Of a stretch of DNA of 64,000 bases, positions 7,289-46,805 are shown piece by piece. The stretch lies in the IMG/VR virus record IMGVR_UViG_3300030339_000003, positions 62,001 through 126,000 of that record; one strand, 5' to 3'. Each line of letters starts with the position of its first letter. The stretch's first letter is position 1. The notes under the pieces were generated by a model, which worked only from the letters and a program-made list of their open reading frames with translations, was not told the DNA's origin and ran no database searches. The position numbers and the translations under genes were made by a program.

Positions 7289-8839
7289 ATGGGACATCTG
7301 TTAATGTTGGTAAAAGTATTAACGTGCTTTTATCATGCCAAGACTTTAAAAGACAAACTGCTAATGAACGAATTGGCTGATTTGTTAAAGACCATCAAAA
7401 CGCCGACAACAGATGTATTTGTTCAAGACCGTAAAGTAGATGCCGAAATTCGTTCTACTATAGATTGGGTCATAGAACAACCAGATGATGAAGCAATCAT
7501 AAAATCAATGCTTTTGCAACGTGTTTATAGCTTTGTAAACAACGCACCGGAACTTAAAGAACTCATTAGTGCAGGATTTGAAGATTATCCGACTAGTGAA
7601 CGTACTCGTCAAATTATTTATAAACATATCGAAGAAATTCGTAAAGAACAAGAAAATACAAAGATCAATACAGCTTTAAAGAAAAAGTTTAAAGATTTTC
7701 ACTTTAAAGAATTGCATACCTTGGGTAAAACTGAATGGCTTGACTTGATGGAAGCTATTCAAAATAAAGTTAACCATAACTACAATGAAGAAAAACAAAC
7801 AGAAATTGTTGAATCGGTAAACAGTGAAGATAAAAACGTATTCTTAGAAATTGTACAACGAGCACAGAACGAAAGTAATGGCAGTGGTATTATCAAGTTA
7901 GGCATTCAAGGCATGAACCGTGGGTTAGGTCCAGACCAAGGTCAACGTCGTGGTAAGACTTACTTATGGAACGCATTGACTAACCGTGGTAAGTCTTTAA
8001 TGATGGGTCATGCAATTGCAAGTTGTGGTTTGTATAACAAAGCTCAACCTATGTTGCGTAACAAAGCTAAGATACCTACAATCGTCCTGGACTCTGCGGA
8101 AGATGGCATTGAACTTATCCTAACCCGTATGTACAAACTTATCAGTGTGGCTAAGACAGGCACTGTAGTGCCGTTTGAAGAAGTCACTGCTGAAATTGTT
8201 CACAAAACTATTACCGAAGCCTTTATTGAAAATGGTTGGTATTTTGTATTCAACCAAATTGAACCTAACAAAGATAACTTTAATAACTTCTGTTCACGTC
8301 TCCGTCGTTTAGAAATGAAAGGTCACGAAATCATTTACTACGTTTATGATTATCTGGCTATGATGGAACTCGATGGCATTATCGGTGACTCCAAGTCTGA
8401 CCGGTTACAGATGTTATTACGTAAAGCTCGTGCCTTTACTTCTGCTCGTGGTATTTGTTTCAATACACCTCATCAACTTAACCCTGACGCTAAACGATTA
8501 TTACGAGAATCAGATGATGACTCGGAAATATACTTCGCACAGATGGTTGCCGGTAAGTCAATGACCGAAGGGTCTACTAAATTGACGAACGAAGTTGATG
8601 CTGAAATAACTATACATGTTGCCAAAACAACAACCGGTAGTTATTTCACTTACGCCATAGGTAAGATTCGTGGTGAAGCGGGGGAAATAGAATACAGCTT
8701 TGGTATTTATGATCTAGACCCTGTGTTAGGGTTAGTGCATGATATCAATGAGAAGAAACCTAAATGTCGTCGTAAGATAAGTCAACGCTTTAATGAGAAC
8801 GGTGATACCGTAGATGATTGGGATGCCTTAGCGGCATAA
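7289..8839 (+). CDS. dnaB: DnaB-like replicative helicase (phiKZ gp118-like)
   Basis: Walker A ALTNRGKS, LDSAED, Walker-B-like VYDYL, and PHQLN equivalent to DnaB SQLNR. Confidence 0.85.
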   Translation: MGHLLMLVKVLTCFYHAKTLKDKLLMNELADLLKTIKTPTTDVFVQDRKVDAEIRSTIDWVIEQPDDEAIIKSMLLQRVYSFVNNAPELKELISAGFEDYPTSERTRQIIYKHIEEIRKEQENTKINTALKKKFKDFHFKELHTLGKTEWLDLMEAIQNKVNHNYNEEKQTEIVESVNSEDKNVFLEIVQRAQNESNGSGIIKLGIQGMNRGLGPDQGQRRGKTYLWNALTNRGKSLMMGHAIASCGLYNKAQPMLRNKAKIPTIVLDSAEDGIELILTRMYKLISVAKTGTVVPFEEVTAEIVHKTITEAFIENGWYFVFNQIEPNKDNFNNFCSRLRRLEMKGHEIIYYVYDYLAMMELDGIIGDSKSDRLQMLLRKARAFTSARGICFNTPHQLNPDAKRLLRESDDDSEIYFAQMVAGKSMTEGSTKLTNEVDAEITIHVAKTTTGSYFTYAIGKIRGEAGEIEYSFGIYDLDPVLGLVHDINEKKPKCRRKISQRFNENGDTVDDWDALAA

Positions 8840-10236: not shown

Positions 10237-10962
10237 TTATCCCCAAACGCCGTATTGTTCCTGAGCTTTGTTTAATGCCGTAATGGAATCACGAGCTTTA
10301 AACTCAGGAACGTTAACATAGTTACTTGGAGGTGTTGGGTCACCGAAGGTCGGAATGTGCCGTGAATTCAACAGATCATAATAAGACGTGAATTCTGGAA
10401 CCGGGGAACGACTAGCTCCACCGCGCACACCAGGCATGGCCATGATACTTAACATATCGGCCAACCCATTGATTTCAAGATCTTTAGTTTTCTTACCAAG
10501 TGCACGTTGTTCGCTGTTAATGGCATACAGTTTTAATTTGCGGTAATCGTTATAAAGATAAGCACTCACCGATTCTAATCCTTTAATCTCCGCCATTGGA
10601 AGATTACTGTAACCCGAGTGTGTAATCATTAGCTCGTACCACAGTGAATTGTATTCTTGAATCGTTTCGTAGATTTCTACAACGTTTTTCTGAGCTTTGT
10701 TAATAGTAACCGGAGAAGAGTCATTAACACGCTCCATAAGGTCTATCAGCGCTGCAACAGTAATACGACGTTCAATAGGGCGTTCGTAAAACTCGTGGTC
10801 AGGAACCGTGTTTTCATGCATCTTAAATTCACGGTCACGGATTTCATCGGTTGACATTGTGTGAGTAGGCAATATCCACACCGGATATAAACGTTTAGTT
10901 AATATCACCCACAAAACCGATAAACGTTGGCGTATCGCCTTGTGTCTTTCAGGTGTTATCAT
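10237..10962 (-). CDS. Conserved hypothetical protein (phiKZ gp100-like by synteny)
   Basis: 241-aa ORF, translationally coupled within the operon. Confidence 0.55.
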   Translation of the reverse strand: MITPERHKAIRQRLSVLWVILTKRLYPVWILPTHTMSTDEIRDREFKMHENTVPDHEFYERPIERRITVAALIDLMERVNDSSPVTINKAQKNVVEIYETIQEYNSLWYELMITHSGYSNLPMAEIKGLESVSAYLYNDYRKLKLYAINSEQRALGKKTKDLEINGLADMLSIMAMPGVRGGASRSPVPEFTSYYDLLNSRHIPTFGDPTPPSNYVNVPEFKARDSITALNKAQEQYGVWG

Positions 10963-36054: not shown

Positions 36055-37821
36055 CTATTCGAGTATCCTTGAAAGGGCTTCTTCCATTGCATTCTCTCCA
36101 ACCCTCGCTCGTCCAGTAAACGTCTGGCTGGTTAGGGTAAAAAAAGCATTGATGACGTTAATAGGTGTATAACCTAATTCTTCCATCCCTGCTGATTTAC
36201 CTGAACAGTTTTCACACGTGTAGTTGGACATGCCCACAAATGTCTTGGACATATAAGGGTAGTGGCGCACGATGGTATCAATGAGGTCAGCACCCATTTC
36301 CTGGTTTTCCAGAATGATGTCGATAAGACCTTTGTTGAACTCATCAGGCGGTGATTCGCTGCGACGAACGATGGTAACGTTTTGTTCTGGGTCGTTATCT
36401 GACATGGTGTGGTATTCAGACACGTAATGCAGATAGTCGGTACCCACCAGACCATTCAACAGTTCGTCACGACGTTCAACGAATTGCTGTTCGGTAATAC
36501 TGGTCTGTTGAATTTGGCTGATTTTTTCTTTGATGTGTTCGGCAAAGAATTCTTCTGCTTCAAACGATTCAGACAGTGTCGGTGCTTTCAACACAAACCA
36601 GCTGTTTTTCAGATGGTTATAAACCGGCTGAATGTCATGCTGATAATTAGTACCGCGTTGGAACGCAATTGATTCTTCACGGCTGTATTTACGACTGAAG
36701 TTAATCATGTTGCCATAAGCGGCAGCTTCTTCTTTCGTATCCAACCATTTGCGATTACGAACCAATACAGACGGGTCAACGACTTTTGTTCTAGTCCAGT
36801 CGCAGCTATCTTCACCTAAACACTGCAATTGGAAATTAACACCACGCGGATAAGCGTTATCCAGCAAAGCAGTAGCAATAGCTTGCATGTCAGTGATCAA
36901 AATAACGTCAGCCAATTCATCAAAATCATTGACATCTTTCATTGACGTACGAATGGTGCGATCTTTAATGAAATTCCAAATAACGCGAATAACAGCGATG
37001 TTAGATAATGCCGGAACGTTTTGCTGAACATGACGAACGTGACCAGTGACAGCTTTAGCGATATTGTTAATGAGATCAGCCAGATCAAGTTTGCCAGACT
37101 TCTTATAGCTAAGTGCAACATAAGAGTTACGCAGCAACAGATCGTACTGGTAAGCTTCGCCCGTAGAGTTTAACGAAGTACGGCGCATGAATTCAGACAA
37201 TGAAAAACGTTTATCGTCTTTAGCACGACTAGGGACTACACCATTAACATCGGCTGTAGCAATTTTGGTAGTACGTTGGTTTTGGTTGGAGATACCCTGT
37301 TCGTTAAGAATCGGGAACTGCACCATAACCGGGTCAAAGATGTTTTGAATGAACCCATACAGCGCCAAGAAGCGAGTATTGAGAACTTCCATATCAATGC
37401 CAGGATAATGTTGATCACAGTACTCAGTCCATTTGGCAACCGCTGCTTGACATTCAGAAACCGTGATATCCAATTTATCACGTTCTTTATCGCTCATGCT
37501 CAAATAACCCAAAGAAGCACGATAGAGCGTCCAGTCAGTAACTGTTTCATTCAAACGGTTATAGTTGTCTTTATTCAAACCGATGAATGTTTTAAAGAAC
37601 TCAACACCTTTACCGTTAGAATCGAAATCGCCTTTAGTGTCCGGCTTTGATGGAGTAGGGTCAGCCATCAATGTGGTTTCTGCTGTTTGAATATCAGCAA
37701 TCTTTACCAAAGGTCTTTCAGCTGCAGGCTGCACATTTGGTGGAGTGACCGGCGCAGCTGGCTGTTGTTCAGCTGAGTGATTAATATCAGTGGCGATTTG
37801 TTCCAGATCTTTATCGTTCAT
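36055..37821 (-). CDS. Conserved protein with Cys pairs, possible baseplate hub assembly factor (T4 gp26/gp51-like)
   Basis: 588 aa; QCLGEDSC and TCENC Cys clusters plus LKAPTL. Confidence 0.4.
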   Translation of the reverse strand: MNDKDLEQIATDINHSAEQQPAAPVTPPNVQPAAERPLVKIADIQTAETTLMADPTPSKPDTKGDFDSNGKGVEFFKTFIGLNKDNYNRLNETVTDWTLYRASLGYLSMSDKERDKLDITVSECQAAVAKWTEYCDQHYPGIDMEVLNTRFLALYGFIQNIFDPVMVQFPILNEQGISNQNQRTTKIATADVNGVVPSRAKDDKRFSLSEFMRRTSLNSTGEAYQYDLLLRNSYVALSYKKSGKLDLADLINNIAKAVTGHVRHVQQNVPALSNIAVIRVIWNFIKDRTIRTSMKDVNDFDELADVILITDMQAIATALLDNAYPRGVNFQLQCLGEDSCDWTRTKVVDPSVLVRNRKWLDTKEEAAAYGNMINFSRKYSREESIAFQRGTNYQHDIQPVYNHLKNSWFVLKAPTLSESFEAEEFFAEHIKEKISQIQQTSITEQQFVERRDELLNGLVGTDYLHYVSEYHTMSDNDPEQNVTIVRRSESPPDEFNKGLIDIILENQEMGADLIDTIVRHYPYMSKTFVGMSNYTCENCSGKSAGMEELGYTPINVINAFFTLTSQTFTGRARVGENAMEEALSRILE

Positions 37822-41666: not shown

Positions 41667-41677
41667 ATAAATTATAC

Positions 41678-41709
41678 TAACTACTACTCCCGCAAGGGAG
41701 TAGTAGTTA
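41678..41709. terminator. Bidirectional hairpin, identical to 8851-8882
   Basis: TAACTACTACTCCC-GCAA-GGGAGTAGTAGTTA between convergent units. Confidence 0.85.
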
Positions 41710-41726
41710 AGTTATATGAATGCAAG

Positions 41727-43378: not shown

Positions 43379-43800
43379 TACTTGCTTAGGAACGATTTCA
43401 GTAACCACTTTTTCGTTGTCAGTGTTTTTAGTTCTATTTTCCATATTGGGAAACTCGCCAGTACGTTGATAGTTGCACGATTAAGTTCTAAGAATTCTTT
43501 AATAAATGAACGCGAACCTATTTCAAATTCATTAACGAAATCTAAGTAACTGGTTGATTGATAGTTCAACATTGACGACCAAGATTCTTCACCTAAGAAT
43601 CTGTTCGCGAACTGTTGTTGTATAACCAAAGAATTCTTAGTTATGTGAGTATCCAACTGTTCAAAGAAGTAATCGTCATCAAATGTTGCTGCACATTCCC
43701 CACGCAATATACTGACCTGCAATACATCACAAGCAAAATTAGTGACATCGTCAGTATAACCTTCAGGAATGCGTAATACATCACTGTATATTTTTTCCAC
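43378..43800 (-). CDS. Small accessory orphan (array member B)
   Basis: 140 aa, coupled on both sides. Confidence 0.65.
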   Translation of the reverse strand: MEKIYSDVLRIPEGYTDDVTNFACDVLQVSILRGECAATFDDDYFFEQLDTHITKNSLVIQQQFANRFLGEESWSSMLNYQSTSYLDFVNEFEIGSRSFIKEFLELNRATINVLASFPIWKIELKTLTTKKWLLKSFLSK

Positions 43801-44206
43801 TTGACGCCTTAGTAATTTTAATTTTACCGCTGAGGGTTAATGTTACGTAAGTTCCGGTCAAGTACTTAACACGTATGTTAAAAGCTTGATCTTTATTAAG
43901 TGTTTCAAAATGGTCATTGATGTCGTGTTTTAAATGCACACGGCGAACTTCTGTCGACCAAAACAAAGGACACTGTTCTTCAATAACAAATTGAGCACGG
44001 AAGCTGACGAATTCTTCCCCAGAGAAAATAATATCAACAACGGGATCATTAGATATTCTTAACGAACCATTATAATGAGGATTAACTTTATAATATTTGA
44101 AATGATCTTTAACGATGGAATGAACGACATCGATCTTATTTAATCCAATTGTGCGATAATGATCGGCGTAATGATTACGTAATACACGTTTTGTTTTAAA
44201 CATCAT
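43781..44206 (-). CDS. Small accessory orphan (array member A), first gene of the early operon
   Basis: AAGGGG RBS then ATG ATG at 44206/44203; about 40 bp downstream of TATATTAC. Confidence 0.65.
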   Translation of the reverse strand: MMFKTKRVLRNHYADHYRTIGLNKIDVVHSIVKDHFKYYKVNPHYNGSLRISNDPVVDIIFSGEEFVSFRAQFVIEEQCPLFWSTEVRRVHLKHDINDHFETLNKDQAFNIRVKYLTGTYVTLTLSGKIKITKASSGKNIQ

Positions 44207-44245
44207 AACCCCTTTTAAAAAATAAATAGTTATCAATACTAATAA

Positions 44246-44253
44246 GTAATATA
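44246..44253 (-). promoter_or_regulatory. Early promoter TATATTAC
   Basis: Exact match to the phiKZ early consensus, between a terminator and the operon start. Confidence 0.7.
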
Positions 44254-44270
44254 GTGTTAAAATATAATAA

Positions 44271-44298
44271 CTTACTAACTGGTTGCCCAGTTAGTAAG
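44271..44298 (-). terminator. Hairpin terminator
   Basis: 12-bp stem CTTACTAACTGG / CCAGTTAGTAAG; GCAA loop on the minus strand. Confidence 0.8.
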
Positions 44299-44303
44299 GA
44301 GTG

Positions 44304-44636
44304 TTATTTTTTAGTAATGATGTAATCGCTACGGAACATGTCAGCTGGAGTTGGGTGCCATACGTCTTGATCAAGCACATTTGAAGATGTCCACATAATT
44401 AAAACATCCATAGTTCCAAAATCACTAACGGCATTTCTCTTTGTAACTTCATGTTCTTTATCAGTCCAACTCACAGATTTAATACTAATTGAACCCCTAG
44501 GGAAATCTAACAAGAAATTCAAAGCAGTACCAAAGGTTACATATTTCAATGTTCCTTTTGCTTCGAGTTCAGCAATGAGTTTCTTATCGATTTTGTCTTT
44601 TACAGTTTTTAATGAAGGTTTATAAGGACTAAGCAT
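44304..44636 (-). CDS. DUF2829/Tad2-like protein 2 (candidate immune-signal sponge)
   Basis: VTFGTALNFL...SVSW...VWHPTPADMFRSDYII; start at 44636 with GGAG RBS. Confidence 0.6.
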   Translation of the reverse strand: MLSPYKPSLKTVKDKIDKKLIAELEAKGTLKYVTFGTALNFLLDFPRGSISIKSVSWTDKEHEVTKRNAVSDFGTMDVLIMWTSSNVLDQDVWHPTPADMFRSDYIITKK

Positions 44637-44913
44637 CAGCAAGCTCCAATACCCATTCAGTGTCAAAAAGATCTGCGGTAGACGGGTGCCACGGCAGCAC
44701 TAAGCCATTAGAAAAAGTTATTACGGCCATTCGGAGTTTAAATTCTTCACTATACTGAATAGTGACGCGTGCTGTTTCATTACTCCAATGTTTGCACCAC
44801 ATACTTACTTTACCGGGCAATGCACTAACTAACATTCCCCATGCTTCACTAAATGTTTGTTTTTCTAAGAACTTTTCTTCTTCCAAATACATCATTGTTT
44901 CTAAAGCGGTCAT
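44629..44913 (-). CDS. DUF2829/Tad2-like protein 1 (candidate immune-signal sponge)
   Basis: QTFSEAWGML...GKVSMWCKHW...LPWHPSTADLFDTEWVL. Confidence 0.6.
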   Translation of the reverse strand: MTALETMMYLEEEKFLEKQTFSEAWGMLVSALPGKVSMWCKHWSNETARVTIQYSEEFKLRMAVITFSNGLVLPWHPSTADLFDTEWVLELADA

Positions 44914-45093
44914 TTAAACCTCGTCTACCGGTACATGATTCTTTAATACAATAACTAAAGCCTCTAATTCTTCCAGACTGTAGTCGCCATCAAGCGTTAC
45001 CCGTTCAAGTGTCTGTTGATCCATCCATTTACCAGATTGCTTTATAGTGGCTCTGGCTTGATCGAGTGACATTTGTTTTATTTGCCTTTGCAT
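44914..45093 (-). CDS. Small hypothetical protein (59 aa), below the track cut-off
   Basis: AAGGA RBS; MQRQIKQMSLDQARATIKQSGKW...LDGDYSLEELEALVIVLKNHVPVDEV*; stop abuts the next ATG. Confidence 0.65.
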   Translation of the reverse strand: MQRQIKQMSLDQARATIKQSGKWMDQQTLERVTLDGDYSLEELEALVIVLKNHVPVDEV

Positions 45094-45135: not shown

Positions 45136-46683
45136 TTAATACATAAATATGCCGCTATCTACGTTCTGATAACTTAAACTACTTTCTTCAAACAGTTCTT
45201 TACGATAGTGATGATAAGACACATGTTTATCAACATCGTCACACACGGTATAACCAAAGATTAAGTCAACACCGTTATGTAATGGGTTTTTGTTTTCACG
45301 AACACGACCACGCATCTGATAGTTACGTTGGACGGATTTAACGTTATGGAAACTGATACACGTAATTAACCCAGGAATGTCTTTACCTGTACCACAACTG
45401 CCAGGTGTACTAAAGACTATTTCGTGCTTACGGTATTCATCCTTGGTATCAGCTTTACCGCCTTGTTCACCAGTAAACGATATGGCGTCCAGTTCAGGAT
45501 AACGTTTCTTAAGTTCTTCTACCATGAACTTGCAAGTTTCTACTTTAGTAAAGAAGAACAAACATTTGGATTCCGGTTTACGGCGATTAAGATAGTATTC
45601 TCTGAAACACCACAACATCAACTCGATATAGTGTGGACGTAACTTTTTGTTATCCATGATGGATGCTTCAAAAGTCGTGTCATTATAAACACCACGAGCA
45701 GTTGTTCGTATTTTGTTTTGCCTGGTATTAATACGATAATGGATTGCTTTGATGTGCATGTGTGCGGTATACACGGTATCTTTTAAACGAACGCTTTCAG
45801 GGAACAAGTACTTATAGATTTTGTTCGTGAAAGGATCTTCCGCTTTAAAGGTTGCTGTGTTACCGATTGTTTTCTTAATGTTACCAAACATCAAGGACAA
45901 ATAAACCTGATGAATGGATTCATGCACTTCATCGTAAATACGTAAGCCAGGACGGAACAACTTATAAACATCATCCAGCGTTGGATAGGTTTCATCCAAA
46001 CGTGACTTACGTACCATGACGTCAATTTTACTTAATGAAATAACTAAGATCTTGGGATTGATTACCCCAGATTTTAATTGATCCATTAATACGTCTAAAC
46101 CGCCCGCATCTGCCACATGATAATCTTTGGGTTGTAAGTCTAAGAACTTACCACACTCGACATTCCAAATAGGAAGGAAGCGAGCATTACCAATAATGAC
46201 CACACGTTCACCAGCAGCTACAGCAGCATATAAATCTAACCAACCTTTACCTACACCTGTGGCTGCATTATTTAACTTTAACGGCCCGTCGTCGGTCAGG
46301 TAAGGCATCCAGTCGTATTGCTCTGGTTTGTTAGGTTGATCGAATCCTACTTTAAACTTTAATTCAACTTTAATAGGTTCTATTAACGGTTCATCGTCAA
46401 TTAAAATATCGTTGTCACTATAACCACGTTGGGTTATGAAATTCTTTAAGTCGGGTAATAACGTTGAGGTTATACGGAGTTCTGTTTTGTCTTTATTAAA
46501 TCTTGCGAAACGATGCGTTACCCCATAAGTCTGAATCATTGGGTTAGATTCAGAAGGTATCATACCGAACTTAAATAAATGATGGTGACAAAACGGAAGA
46601 AGAATCTTTCGTGCAAATTCTTCGGCATAACCGTGTATTCTCAGGTAGCTATTAGCGACGCTTATCGTACACTTGTATCGCAC
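45136..46683 (-). CDS. SF2 helicase, UvsW-like (phiKZ gp75-like)
   Basis: Motif I AATGVGKG, motif II DEVHE, motif III NTAT, motif VI QMRGRVRE. Confidence 0.85.
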   Translation of the reverse strand: MRYKCTISVANSYLRIHGYAEEFARKILLPFCHHHLFKFGMIPSESNPMIQTYGVTHRFARFNKDKTELRITSTLLPDLKNFITQRGYSDNDILIDDEPLIEPIKVELKFKVGFDQPNKPEQYDWMPYLTDDGPLKLNNAATGVGKGWLDLYAAVAAGERVVIIGNARFLPIWNVECGKFLDLQPKDYHVADAGGLDVLMDQLKSGVINPKILVISLSKIDVMVRKSRLDETYPTLDDVYKLFRPGLRIYDEVHESIHQVYLSLMFGNIKKTIGNTATFKAEDPFTNKIYKYLFPESVRLKDTVYTAHMHIKAIHYRINTRQNKIRTTARGVYNDTTFEASIMDNKKLRPHYIELMLWCFREYYLNRRKPESKCLFFFTKVETCKFMVEELKKRYPELDAISFTGEQGGKADTKDEYRKHEIVFSTPGSCGTGKDIPGLITCISFHNVKSVQRNYQMRGRVRENKNPLHNGVDLIFGYTVCDDVDKHVSYHHYRKELFEESSLSYQNVDSGIFMY

Positions 46684-46777: not shown

Positions 46778-46805
46778 AACCTCCTACCCTTGCAGGTAGG
46801 AGGTT
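46778..46805 (-). terminator. Hairpin terminator after nvRNAP beta'-C
   Basis: AACCTCCTACC / GGTAGGAGGTT with a GCAA-containing loop on the minus strand. Confidence 0.8.

What the first reader, a model, noticed from the sequence alone, without database searches (positions are those of the whole stretch)
44304..44913. Tandem pair of divergent DUF2829/Tad2-like proteins: candidate immune second-messenger sponges
Both ORFs have the DUF2829 layout: N-terminal TF(S/G)xA helix, a central W, and C-terminal W-H-P-(S/T)-x-A-D-(L/M)-F-x-x-(E/D)-(W/Y). Tad2 of this family sequesters Thoeris gcADPR, and some homologues bind CBASS cyclic dinucleotides. A nuclear shell blocks DNA-targeting defences but not signalling-based abortive infection, so sponges fit this phage's needs. 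Both copies lack the usual R-x-G-W-N-G-K segment and differ strongly from each other, and their genes overlap. This suggests different ligands or a hetero-oligomeric sponge with new specificity.
Basis: partly seen in the sequence, partly recalled or inferred. Interest (0 to 1): 0.8.

Follow-up and report, generated by a model that had tools for sequence, protein, structure and literature searches.

The report
Tandem divergent Tad2-like sponge genes
Two small overlapping genes in an uncultured jumbo phage are real but very divergent relatives of Tad2, a phage protein that soaks up bacterial immune alarm molecules, and both genes vary unusually fast between near-identical phages; this is a new variant of a known counter-defence family, and its function has not been tested.

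Summary
Two minus-strand genes, A (44629-44913, 94 aa) and B (44304-44636, 110 aa), overlap by 8 nt and are paralogues (26% identity, E=4e-8).

Both score below the Pfam threshold for PF11195 (Tad2-like). The family assignment is still well supported:
- A profile of the pair finds only Tad2-like proteins in 1.84 billion sequences.
- Seven of its eight weak PDB matches (E up to 10) are Tad2 chains.
- AlphaFold2 models (pLDDT 92 and 82) match only Tad2 structures.

The main gcADPR-contacting residues of SPO1 Tad2 (W25, W73, D79) are invariant. Both copies have almost no β2-β3 insertion. That insertion carries the dimer helix and, in HgmTad2, the cyclic-dinucleotide site. Both copies also carry an extra N-terminal helix.

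The pair is conserved in at least three related phage genomes. Two more distant relatives carry a single copy at the same locus. The pair is under purifying selection, yet A and B alleles are reshuffled between genomes that are 92-96% identical. One 120-nt patch of B, which lines the predicted pocket, is only about 60% identical.

Most likely these are minimal Tad2-type sponges for TIR/ADPR-derived signals. Whether they form a hetero-oligomer or have new ligands is untested. Tad2-like genes already occur in related jumbo phages.

The parts
44629..44913 (-). ORF A, 94 aa. Tad2-fold protein and the copy nearer the single-copy relatives. Acidic (pI 4.6). Predicted elements: extra N-terminal helix (3-13), strand (15-19), α1 TFSEA helix (21-30), β1-β4, W75-HPSTAD α3, β5.
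   Evidence: ORF list. PF11195 is the top Pfam hit at 19.8 bits, E=1.2e-3. AF2 pLDDT 91.9. The top 21 Foldseek PDB hits are all Tad2, TM 0.56-0.87. dN/dS is 0.10-0.21 against orthologues.
44304..44636 (-). ORF B, 110 aa from the ATG at 44636. Tad2-fold paralogue and the more derived copy. Longer N-terminal helix (12-27). Basic in this genome (pI 8.8). The W57+1 position is hypervariable among alleles (T/A/V/L/E).
   Evidence: 110-aa gene calls in relatives. PF11195 at 17.6 bits, E=5.5e-3. AF2 pLDDT 81.5. The top 6 Foldseek PDB hits are all Tad2. dN/dS is 0.06-0.28. pI.
44629..44636 (-). 8-nt overlap ATGCTTAG. The start codon of B lies inside the last codons and stop of A, an arrangement typical of translational coupling.
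   Evidence: Read directly from the sequence. The same 8-nt overlap is seen in L001, L002, L009, L010 and L012.
44361..44480 (-). Hypervariable cassette inside B (residues about 53-92). It covers the W57 loop, β2, β3 and the β3-β4 loop. In SPO1 Tad2 the β1-β2 and β3-β4 loops line the ligand pocket.
   Evidence: 60-62% nucleotide identity to L009, while the flanks are 93-100% identical. pN/pS is about 0.5 here against 0.08 in residues 1-43. The substitution spectrum is not adenine-specific, so this is not a diversity-generating retroelement.
44914..45093 (-). 59-aa gene whose stop abuts the ATG of A (TAAATG). It accompanies the Tad2-like gene or genes in L001, L009, L012 and L005. Function unknown.
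   Evidence: No Pfam or PHROG match, only one weak (E=0.0058) PADLOC endonuclease-effector match, and no useful Atlas lead.
44271..44298 (-). Perfect 12-bp hairpin followed by a T-rich tail, 6 nt after the stop of B. Probable intrinsic terminator closing the helicase-59aa-A-B unit.
   Evidence: Terminator scan: 8 sites found against 3.1 expected. The 60-nt bin containing the hairpin (44241-44300) is 100% identical in L001 and L009.
45136..46683 (-). Conserved DNA helicase gene immediately upstream. It anchors the locus and is preceded by another hairpin at 46778-46805.
   Evidence: PHROG 16 DNA helicase, E=4e-40. Synteny with L001, L005, L006, L009 and RisingSun gp45. Hairpin.

Best explanation
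A and B are two diverged copies of a stripped-down Tad2-type sponge.

Each copy keeps the Tad2 core: helix α1, a five-stranded antiparallel sheet, and helix α3 carrying W-x-P-(S/T)-x-A-D. Each keeps the two tryptophans and the aspartate that clamp glycocyclic ADP-ribose in SPO1 Tad2. I therefore propose that they oligomerise and sequester a TIR-derived, ADP-ribose-based alarm molecule in the host cytoplasm. Candidates are Thoeris-type signals such as 3'cADPR, His-ADPR or N7-cADPR. Sequestration would keep the abortive-infection effector off.

Copy A keeps the ancestral W-N pocket loop. Copy B has replaced it and carries a fast-evolving cassette over the pocket-lining loops. The pair therefore most likely widens or retunes the range of signals covered.

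Both copies lack the β2-β3 insertion, which forms the dimer helix α2 in SPO1 Tad2 and the cyclic-dinucleotide pocket in HgmTad2. Both have gained an N-terminal helix. Their assembly mode may therefore differ from the canonical homotetramer.

Shown: homology, fold, residue conservation, conserved pairing, purifying selection, and allele mosaicism. Inferred: oligomerisation, ligand, and anti-defence activity.
For: Family:
- PF11195 is the top Pfam hit for both proteins.
- An exhaustive profile search of 1.84e9 representatives returned six proteins. Two are the pair's own families. Of the other four, three pass the PF11195 gathering score (32.6, 26.2 and 46.6 bits) and the fourth is sub-threshold.
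- The 11-sequence profile against PDB returned 8 matches at E up to 10, and 7 are Tad2. SPO1 gp34.65 scores E=1.4e-4; the others include HgmTad2/AcrIIA7, ModTad2 and SptTad2.

Fold:
- AF2 pLDDT is 91.9 for A and 81.5 for B.
- For A, Foldseek hits 1-21 against PDB are all Tad2, then E jumps to 0.3. For B, hits 1-6 are all Tad2.
- Against BFVD the top hits are Tad2-like-domain proteins.

Pocket:
- The invariant columns across all 11 sequences are W43, W75, P77 and D81 in A numbering.
- HMMER aligns these to SPO1 W25, W73, P75 and D79. W25, W73 and D79 are the principal gcADPR contacts (10.1101/2023.05.01.538930). The equivalent HgmTad2 mutants W21A/N22A and S90A/T92A/D93A lose binding (10.1101/2023.11.15.567273).

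Real, selected genes:
- The 94+110 aa pair with its 8-nt overlap is kept in L001, L009/L010 and L012.
- dN/dS is 0.06-0.28.

Arms-race signature:
- In genomes 92-96% identical overall, A (against L001) or a 120-nt patch of B (against L009 and L012) falls to 60-77% identity.
- Allele combinations A1B1, A2B1 and A1B2 all exist.

Context:
- The pair sits in a variable block of small genes between the conserved helicase and RNA polymerase genes.
- In relative L005 the same block also holds a protein with an Acb4-type domain, PF13876.
- Sponges in this phage family have precedent: phiKZ Tad1 gp184 (10.1101/2025.11.23.690004) and RisingSun gp7, which scores 37.4 bits on PF11195.
Against: - Neither protein reaches the Pfam gathering score.
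- SPO1 N26, which contacts the phosphates, is S in A of this genome and T in B. In B this position varies across alleles as T/A/V/L/E.
- Other pocket positions differ: SPO1 T78 is A in both copies, H71 is L in A, and D67 is N in A (mapping).
- The α2 dimerisation element is missing, so the canonical tetramer, and with it the inter-protomer pocket, cannot be assumed.
- There is no ligand, binding, oligomer or expression evidence. The only RNA-labelled run that holds related sequence covers only the 5' part of the helicase gene, not A or B.
- The host and its defence systems are unknown.
- The AF2 alignments are shallow (11 sequences) and include Pfam-level Tad2-like proteins.
Confidence: 0.55

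Rival explanations
1. A and B co-assemble into one hetero-oligomer, for example A2B2. Pockets would be built from one A and one B protomer, giving an asymmetric binding site with a specificity that neither homo-oligomer has. This is a sub-variant of the sponge reading and concerns only how the proteins assemble.
For: - The 8-nt start/stop overlap with its own Shine-Dalgarno suggests coupled, near-equimolar synthesis.
- The two genes were never found apart in the pair-bearing lineage.
- In Tad2 every pocket is formed by two protomers (10.1101/2023.05.01.538930), so a mixed assembly would directly create new pockets.
- In this genome A is acidic (pI 4.6) and B basic (pI 8.8).
- Residues 1-43 of B, comprising the extra helix and α1, are almost invariant (pN 0-0.03), as expected for an interface.
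Against: - A and B alleles are found in all combinations (A1B1, A2B1, A1B2), so their variable parts are not co-adapted.
- The charge complementarity is not conserved. B orthologues range from pI 5.1 to 8.8.
- Overlapping genes are common in phages whatever the protein interactions.
- All sponges characterised so far are homo-oligomers (PMC12265669).
- No multimer model could be run here.
Confidence: 0.2
2. The proteins have the Tad2 fold but a different job. They might bind a host or phage protein, or a non-immune nucleotide or metabolite, perhaps linked to the helicase they are co-transcribed with. They might instead act as an anti-CRISPR, as was once claimed for AcrIIA7.
For: - They sit at the 3' end of what looks like a helicase operon bounded by two hairpins.
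- They fall below the Pfam threshold and lack both N26 and the α2 insertion.
- A DUF2829 protein was first reported as AcrIIA7 (cited in 10.1101/2023.05.01.538930).
Against: - The residues kept invariant over about 20-30% sequence identity are exactly the ligand-clamping W, W and D, not a protein-interaction surface.
- The AcrIIA7 anti-Cas9 activity could not be reproduced (10.1101/2023.11.15.567273).
- RisingSun has the same helicase without these genes, so they are accessory to replication.
- Of the 18 Tad2 homologues tested in 10.1101/2025.08.24.671296, many inhibited more than one signalling defence system, and each of the systems tested was inhibited by at least one homologue; no non-sponge role has been demonstrated for a Tad2 homologue.
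Confidence: 0.15
3. Only A is an active sponge. B is a degenerating or regulatory duplicate with no ligand pocket of its own.
For: - A clusters loosely with the single-copy relatives (support 84/87) and keeps W-N(N).
- The N26-equivalent position in B is unconstrained, and its central region shows pN/pS of about 0.5.
- The B model has lower confidence in residues 70-90.
Against: - B keeps W57, W93, P95 and D99 in all five alleles, with an intact frame.
- Whole-gene dN/dS is 0.06-0.28.
- The termini are under very strong constraint (pN/pS 0-0.12).
- Divergence is confined to a cassette with sharp borders, which looks like allele exchange, not decay.
Confidence: 0.08
4. The similarity to Tad2 is a chance or convergent resemblance of two small β-rich proteins.
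For: - Pfam scores are sub-threshold.
- Single-sequence PDB searches found no Tad2.
- The first 7-sequence profile found nothing in PDB.
Against: Five independent lines converge on the same family:
- two separate Pfam top hits;
- transitive profile hits;
- a PDB profile search in which 7 of 8 hits are Tad2;
- Foldseek with probability 1.00 and a sharp gap to the next fold;
- identity of the invariant residues with the functional residues.

Confidence: 0.02

Closest known systems
SPO1 Tad2 (gp34.65; PDB 8SME/8SMF/8SMG, 8WJE), founding Thoeris anti-defence 2 sponge
   Same: Small protein of about 90 aa. Same α1 / five-strand sheet / α3 core, with Foldseek TM 0.6-0.78 and rmsd 2.1-3 Å. W25, W73, P75 and D79 are conserved, S76 is conserved as S or T, and the N-terminal (T/S)-F-G-x-A helix is shared.
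   Different: 15-20% identity and below the Pfam threshold. The R-S-G-W-N-G-K loop is reduced to the W alone, or W-N in A orthologues. The insertion at residues 36-59, with α2 (the V-dimer interface), is replaced by a 4-5 residue turn. There is an extra N-terminal helix of 11-16 residues plus a strand. The gene is present as two diverged, overlapping copies.
HgmTad2 / AcrIIA7 and SptTad2 (PDB 8KBI-8KBM, 8WJC, 8WJD, 9KZR): dual gcADPR and cyclic-dinucleotide sponges
   Same: Same family and the same conserved C-terminal W...(S/T)-x-(T/A)-D-(L/M)-x-x-x-D-W segment. One gene locus may cover more than one signal.
   Different: HgmTad2 gains its second specificity from a roughly 40-residue insertion inside one polypeptide (10.1101/2023.11.15.567273). 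The window proteins have essentially no insertion and instead have two genes.
Erwinia phage RisingSun gp7 (annotated 'putative thymidylate kinase') and Edwardsiella phage pEt-SU DUF2829 protein: Tad2-like proteins of cultured jumbo phages
   Same: Tad2-like proteins in the same group of phiKZ-like jumbo phages. They are Foldseek hits of model A. RisingSun gp7 scores 37.4 bits on PF11195 and aligns to the pair's profile (hhalign E=1.5e-4).
   Different: RisingSun gp7 is a single gene at another locus, next to dTMP kinase. It has a canonical-length insertion, passes Pfam, and has E in place of D79. RisingSun has nothing Tad2-like detected after its helicase.
phiKZ Tad1 (gp184)
   Same: A signal sponge encoded by a nucleus-forming jumbo phage, non-essential in the laboratory (10.1101/2025.11.23.690004).
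   Different: Unrelated fold and a hexameric assembly.
Tad2-Acb4 and Tad2-Sequestin fusion proteins (PMC12265669)
   Same: Phages combine two sponge modules at one locus to block several signals.
   Different: Those are fusions of unrelated sponge families in one chain. Here two paralogues of the same family are separate, translationally coupled genes.

Membership tests
Tad2 / DUF2829 (Pfam PF11195) | Sequence match to the PF11195 model at or above the gathering score (25 bits) | tested here: not met
   A scores 19.8 bits (E=1.2e-3) and B 17.6 bits (E=5.5e-3). PF11195 is the top hit for both. The link is transitive: the pair's profile finds P0008, P0009 and P0010, which score 32.6, 26.2 and 46.6 bits.
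Tad2 / DUF2829 (Pfam PF11195) | Tad2 fold: helix α1, antiparallel β1-β5 sheet, and helix α3 before β5 | tested here: met
   AF2 models have pLDDT 91.9 and 81.5, with elements in the right order. Foldseek against PDB gives only Tad2 chains with probability 1.00: 21 for A and 6 for B, with the next hit at E of at least 0.3. BFVD hits are Tad2-like-domain proteins. This rests on predicted, not solved, structures.
Tad2 / DUF2829 (Pfam PF11195) | Core gcADPR-clamping residues W25, W73 and D79 (SPO1 numbering) | tested here: met
   These correspond to W43/W75/D81 in A and W57/W93/D99 in B. They are invariant across all 11 aligned sequences and are aligned to the SPO1 residues by HMMER.
Tad2 / DUF2829 (Pfam PF11195) | Phosphate-binding N26 within the R-x-G-W-N-G-K loop | tested here: not met
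   A has S44 here, whereas its orthologues have N (W-N-N). B has T58, and the position varies as T/A/V/L/E among alleles. The R, G, G and K of the loop are absent in both.
Tad2 / DUF2829 (Pfam PF11195) | β2-β3 insertion carrying helix α2, which forms the V-shaped dimer interface and, when long, the cyclic-dinucleotide pocket | tested here: not met
   SPO1 shows a 13-residue insert relative to the pair's profile. The models have a 4-5 residue turn between β2 and β3 and no helix there.
Tad2 / DUF2829 (Pfam PF11195) | Homotetramer with two inter-protomer ligand pockets | not testable with these tools
   Only single-chain prediction was available. This needs AlphaFold-Multimer or AlphaFold3, or SEC-MALS or a crystal structure.
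Tad2 / DUF2829 (Pfam PF11195) | Binds and sequesters an immune signalling nucleotide without cleaving it, and rescues phage from Thoeris, CBASS or Pycsar | not testable with these tools
   Requires biochemistry and plaque assays.
Phage counter-defence (accessory) gene in general | Located in a variable accessory region, dispensable in relatives, and fast-evolving or mosaic alleles between close genomes | tested here: met
   Nothing Tad2-like was detected at this locus in RisingSun, and only a single copy is present in L005 and L006. There are local drops to 60-77% identity in backgrounds that are 92-96% identical.

The most novel reading that the evidence does not exclude
A and B assemble into a hetero-tetrameric sponge, which would be the first heteromeric immune-signal sponge. 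Each pocket would pair the conserved 'ancestral' half-site of A with the exchangeable half-site of B. Swapping the 120-nt B cassette by recombination between co-circulating phages would then retune which alarm molecule is captured. The N-terminal helices would replace the lost α2 helix as the assembly interface.
Probability: 0.15. Interest if true: 0.7.

Novelty: new variant of a known kind. Interest (0 to 1): 0.45.

Why it matters
Sponge proteins are one of the main ways phages defeat signalling-based immunity (Thoeris, CBASS, Pycsar). The Tad2 family has proved unusually versatile.

This locus offers a natural experiment with three features:
- a minimal Tad2 core without the insertion that normally provides dimerisation and second-ligand binding;
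- duplication into two coupled genes;
- a sharply bounded, exchangeable cassette over the pocket loops, seen in otherwise near-identical phages.

If the pair is active, comparing the natural alleles (A1/A2, B1/B2) would show which loops set Tad2 ligand specificity. It would also show whether sponges can work as hetero-oligomers; all known ones are homo-oligomers. It would add a Tad2-type counter-defence to an uncultured branch of nucleus-forming jumbo phages, which are expected to depend on such cytoplasmic countermeasures.

If the pair is inactive, it marks the limit of what the Tad2 fold predicts.

Tried and rejected
- Single-sequence phmmer of A and B against PDB gave only noise: Myb, proteasome and Fab chains.
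- The first 7-sequence profile found nothing in PDB. Tad2 appeared only after four distant relatives were added.
- Megablast of the locus against 50,697 phage records found no match. tblastn of A found no match. tblastn of P0008 gave only weak DUF2829 hits.
- PHROGs and PADLOC were uninformative for A, B and the neighbouring small genes.
- The word-indexed protein search with the profile added no new members.
- The IMG/VR and JGI metagenome scans returned only the window's own contig and identical copies. One call failed for lack of a conserved stretch.
- RisingSun gp46-gp49, at the syntenic position, were tested as possible cryptic Tad2-like proteins. gp46-49 gave no PF11195 hit, and hhalign of gp47 against the pair's profile was null.
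- A diversity-generating retroelement was considered as the source of the B cassette and rejected. Substitutions are not adenine-biased.
- A programmed A-B fusion was considered and rejected. B has its own GGAG and ATG, and the overlap includes A's stop.
- The phylogeny of A, B and the single-copy relatives was unresolved. Branches are long, support is 84/87 at best, and P0010 is attracted to B. The order of duplication and divergence therefore remains open.
- Public runs gave no transcript evidence. The one RNA-labelled run covers only the 5' part of the helicase gene.
- The 588-aa protein at 36058-37821 was tried as chimallin. It had no PDB sequence match, and the homologues' annotations were uninformative.
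- The ESM Atlas gave nothing for the 59-aa neighbour.
- The window gene at 10240-10962 is not a thymidylate kinase. The RisingSun gp7-type locus could therefore not be examined in this window.
Full report
**What is there**

The window belongs to a 231-kb uncultured viral contig, IMGVR_UViG_3300030339_000003. The same sequence is recovered from peat metagenome runs.

It is a phiKZ-like jumbo phage:
- Two split RNA-polymerase β-type subunits (PHROG 3015 and 3295), a family-B DNA polymerase and a phiKZ-type major head protein are present.
- The best relatives of the RNA polymerase subunit are Erwinia phages RisingSun and Joad (52% aa identity), followed by Pseudomonas phage EL.
- No nucleotide-level match exists among 50,697 deposited phage genomes.

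On the minus strand a DNA helicase gene (45136-46683) is followed by three tightly packed genes:
- a 59-aa gene (44914-45093);
- ORF A (44629-44913, 94 aa);
- ORF B (44304-44636, 110 aa from its ATG).

After these comes a perfect 12-bp hairpin with a T-rich tail (44298-44271), 6 nt after B's stop. The stop of the 59-aa gene abuts A's ATG. A and B overlap by 8 nt (ATGCTTAG). Each has its own Shine-Dalgarno sequence.

**Are A and B related to each other and to Tad2?**

A and B are paralogues: BLASTP gives 26% identity and E=4e-8.

PF11195 (Tad2-like, formerly DUF2829) is the best Pfam hit for each. Both scores are below the 25-bit gathering score: 19.8 bits (E=1.2e-3) for A and 17.6 bits (E=5.5e-3) for B.

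Close homologues are very few, namely two clusters for A and three for B besides its own. An exhaustive HMMER search with a profile of both families against 1.84 billion representatives found only six proteins. Four of them are distant (P0007-P0010). Three of those four pass the Pfam threshold for PF11195 and the fourth is sub-threshold.

An 11-sequence profile searched against all PDB sequences returned eight matches at E up to 10, and seven are Tad2 proteins. SPO1 gp34.65 scores E=1.4e-4. The others are HgmTad2/AcrIIA7, ModTad2 and SptTad2.

AlphaFold2 models built without templates are confident: pLDDT 91.9 for A and 81.5 for B.
- For A, Foldseek hits 1-21 against PDB are all Tad2 chains, with TM 0.56-0.87 and rmsd mostly 2-3 Å. 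The E-value then jumps from 0.02 to 0.3.
- For B, hits 1-6 are all Tad2, followed by noise.
- Against the viral structure library the top hits are proteins named 'Thoeris anti-defense 2-like domain-containing'.

I regard membership of the Tad2 superfamily as established, as an outlying subfamily that the current Pfam model does not capture.

**Anatomy compared with characterised Tad2**

Only four columns are invariant across the 11 sequences: W43, W75, P77 and D81 in A numbering, equivalent to W57, W93, P95 and D99 in B. HMMER aligns them to SPO1 W25, W73, P75 and D79.

In the SPO1 Tad2-gcADPR structure, W25 and W73 of both protomers provide the van der Waals clamp. N26 and D79 provide the polar contacts (10.1101/2023.05.01.538930). 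The equivalent HgmTad2 mutants lose gcADPR binding (10.1101/2023.11.15.567273). The residues that survive at about 20% identity are therefore the ligand residues.

There are three differences from canonical Tad2:
1. The R-x-G-W-N-G-K loop is reduced to the tryptophan. A orthologues and the single-copy relatives keep W-N-N (the window's A has W-S-N). B has W-x-D-K, with x = T/A/V/L/E among five alleles.
2. The β2-β3 insertion (SPO1 residues 36-59) is replaced by a 4-5-residue turn. In SPO1 this insertion contains helix α2 and forms the V-shaped dimer. An enlarged version forms the cyclic-dinucleotide pocket in HgmTad2.
3. Both proteins have an extra N-terminal helix (A 3-13, B 12-27) and a short strand before the T-F-(S/G)-x-A helix.

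Two consequences follow, both by inference. Cyclic-dinucleotide binding by the known insertion-domain route is not available. The quaternary structure cannot simply be assumed to be the canonical tetramer.

**Evolutionary context**

The 94+110-aa pair, with its 8-nt overlap, recurs after the same helicase and 59-aa gene in related contigs from independent samples: L001/L002/L003, L009/L010 and L012. L011 has B and a truncated A. These contigs are 92-96% identical in nucleotide sequence to the window overall.

Two more distant relatives carry one Tad2-like gene at the same position:
- L005, whose helicase region is about 77% identical, has P0008 (111 aa, passes Pfam), preceded by the same 59-aa gene.
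- L006/L007 have P0007 (97 aa) directly after the helicase.

RisingSun shows nothing Tad2-like between its helicase and the next RNA polymerase gene. It does encode a canonical Tad2-like protein elsewhere. This is gp7, mis-annotated as 'putative thymidylate kinase', which scores 37.4 bits on PF11195.

The simplest reading is a tandem duplication of a single locus-resident gene in the window's lineage. A is the conservative copy and B the derived one. However, the tree is too weak to fix the order of events. No third copy exists in the window.

**Selection and mosaicism**

Whole-gene dN/dS is 0.10-0.21 for A and 0.06-0.28 for B. Both are functional genes.

Their divergence is strikingly uneven:
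- Against L009 the whole 3-kb region is 93-100% identical, except for 120 nt inside B (44480-44361, residues about 53-92) at 60-62% identity.
- Against L001 the divergent patch is A (68-77% identity), while B is 82-97% identical.
- Against L012 both are affected.

A of the window is therefore 98% identical in nucleotide sequence (97% in amino acids) to A of L009 but 72% identical in amino acids to A of L001. B is 93% amino-acid identical to B of L001 but 73% to B of L009. The combinations A1B1, A2B1 and A1B2 all exist, each in at least two assemblies. This means there is recombination between, and within, the two genes.

The B cassette spans the W57 loop, β2, β3 and the β3-β4 loop. In SPO1 Tad2 the β1-β2 and β3-β4 loops line the pocket. 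Its pN/pS is about 0.5, against 0.08 for residues 1-43.

This pattern is typical of genes in an arms race. It is not proof of positive selection, because pN/pS stays below 1 and synonymous sites are near saturation. The substitution spectrum excludes a diversity-generating retroelement.

**Mechanism proposed**

Shown:
- Tad2 fold;
- conserved W/W/D clamp;
- conserved coupled pair;
- purifying selection with exchangeable pocket cassettes;
- accessory location.

Inferred: the proteins oligomerise in the host cytoplasm and sequester an ADP-ribose-based TIR signal (Thoeris-type), which prevents effector activation. A would provide the ancestral specificity and B a second or retuned one.

Precedents exist:
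- Tad2 homologues inhibit types I, II and IV Thoeris, CBASS and Pycsar, often more than one system per protein (10.1101/2025.08.24.671296).
- Phages fuse different sponge families to cover several signals (PMC12265669).
- phiKZ itself carries Tad1 (10.1101/2025.11.23.690004).

The hetero-oligomer idea remains open. Coupled translation, strict co-occurrence, and the fact that every Tad2 pocket is shared by two protomers speak for it. The free reassortment of A and B alleles, the non-conserved charge complementarity, and the fact that all known sponges are homo-oligomers (PMC12265669) speak against it.

**Limits**

- There is no ligand, oligomer, expression or host evidence.
- The public runs holding this sequence are almost all DNA metagenomes: peat, biofilm, food and freshwater.
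- The structure models rest on an 11-sequence alignment.
- The 'nuclear shell' premise is inferred from the phage's relatives. Chimallin was not identified in the window.

**Verdict**

This is a new, structurally pared-down and duplicated variant of a known counter-defence family, in a phage group where Tad2-like and Tad1 sponges already occur. Interest is moderate. The natural allele series and the possibility of a heteromeric sponge make it a worthwhile bench target.

Noticed in passing
window 43781-44206 (minus strand), with L001 6711-7139 and L012 2056-2484: The 141-aa gene just downstream of the hairpin is another mosaic patch. It is 42-72% nucleotide-identical to L001 and L012 but 100% identical to L009, while the surrounding genes are 85-100% identical. 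It has no Pfam, PHROG or PADLOC match.
   Followed up: partly
L005 7568-8404: In the relative that has a single Tad2-like gene, the same accessory block also encodes a 278-aa protein. Its C-terminal 80 residues match PF13876 (Phage_gp49_66, the Acb4 anti-CBASS sponge family) at 35.8 bits. This suggests the block is a counter-defence island in this clade. No equivalent was found in the window.
   Followed up: partly
L017 (Erwinia phage RisingSun MF459646.1) 7340-7711: RisingSun gp7 is annotated 'putative thymidylate kinase' but is a Tad2-like protein (PF11195 at 37.4 bits, 123 aa). It sits next to the true dTMP kinase gp6. It carries E where SPO1 Tad2 has D79. RisingSun is a cultured phage in which a Tad2-like protein could be tested.
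   Followed up: partly
window 44914-45093 (minus strand): A 59-aa gene abuts ORF A. It travels with the Tad2-like gene or genes in L001, L009, L012 and L005, but is absent from L006 and RisingSun. It is helical by composition and has no family match. It could be a partner or another small counter-defence protein.
   Followed up: partly
window 46778-46805 and 41677-41710 (minus strand): Two further strong hairpins with T-rich tails (12 and 15 bp stems) lie at gene-block boundaries, one after the RNA polymerase β gene and one at the end of the small-gene block. Together with 44271-44298 they look like the terminators that partition this region into transcription units.
   Followed up: no
window 36058-37821 (minus strand): A 588-aa protein (PHROG 4585, function unknown) is conserved across phiKZ-like phages. 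It is homologous to RisingSun gp53, annotated 'ZipA-like cell division protein'. It was considered as a chimallin candidate, but there was no sequence match to solved structures, so its identity is unresolved.
   Followed up: partly
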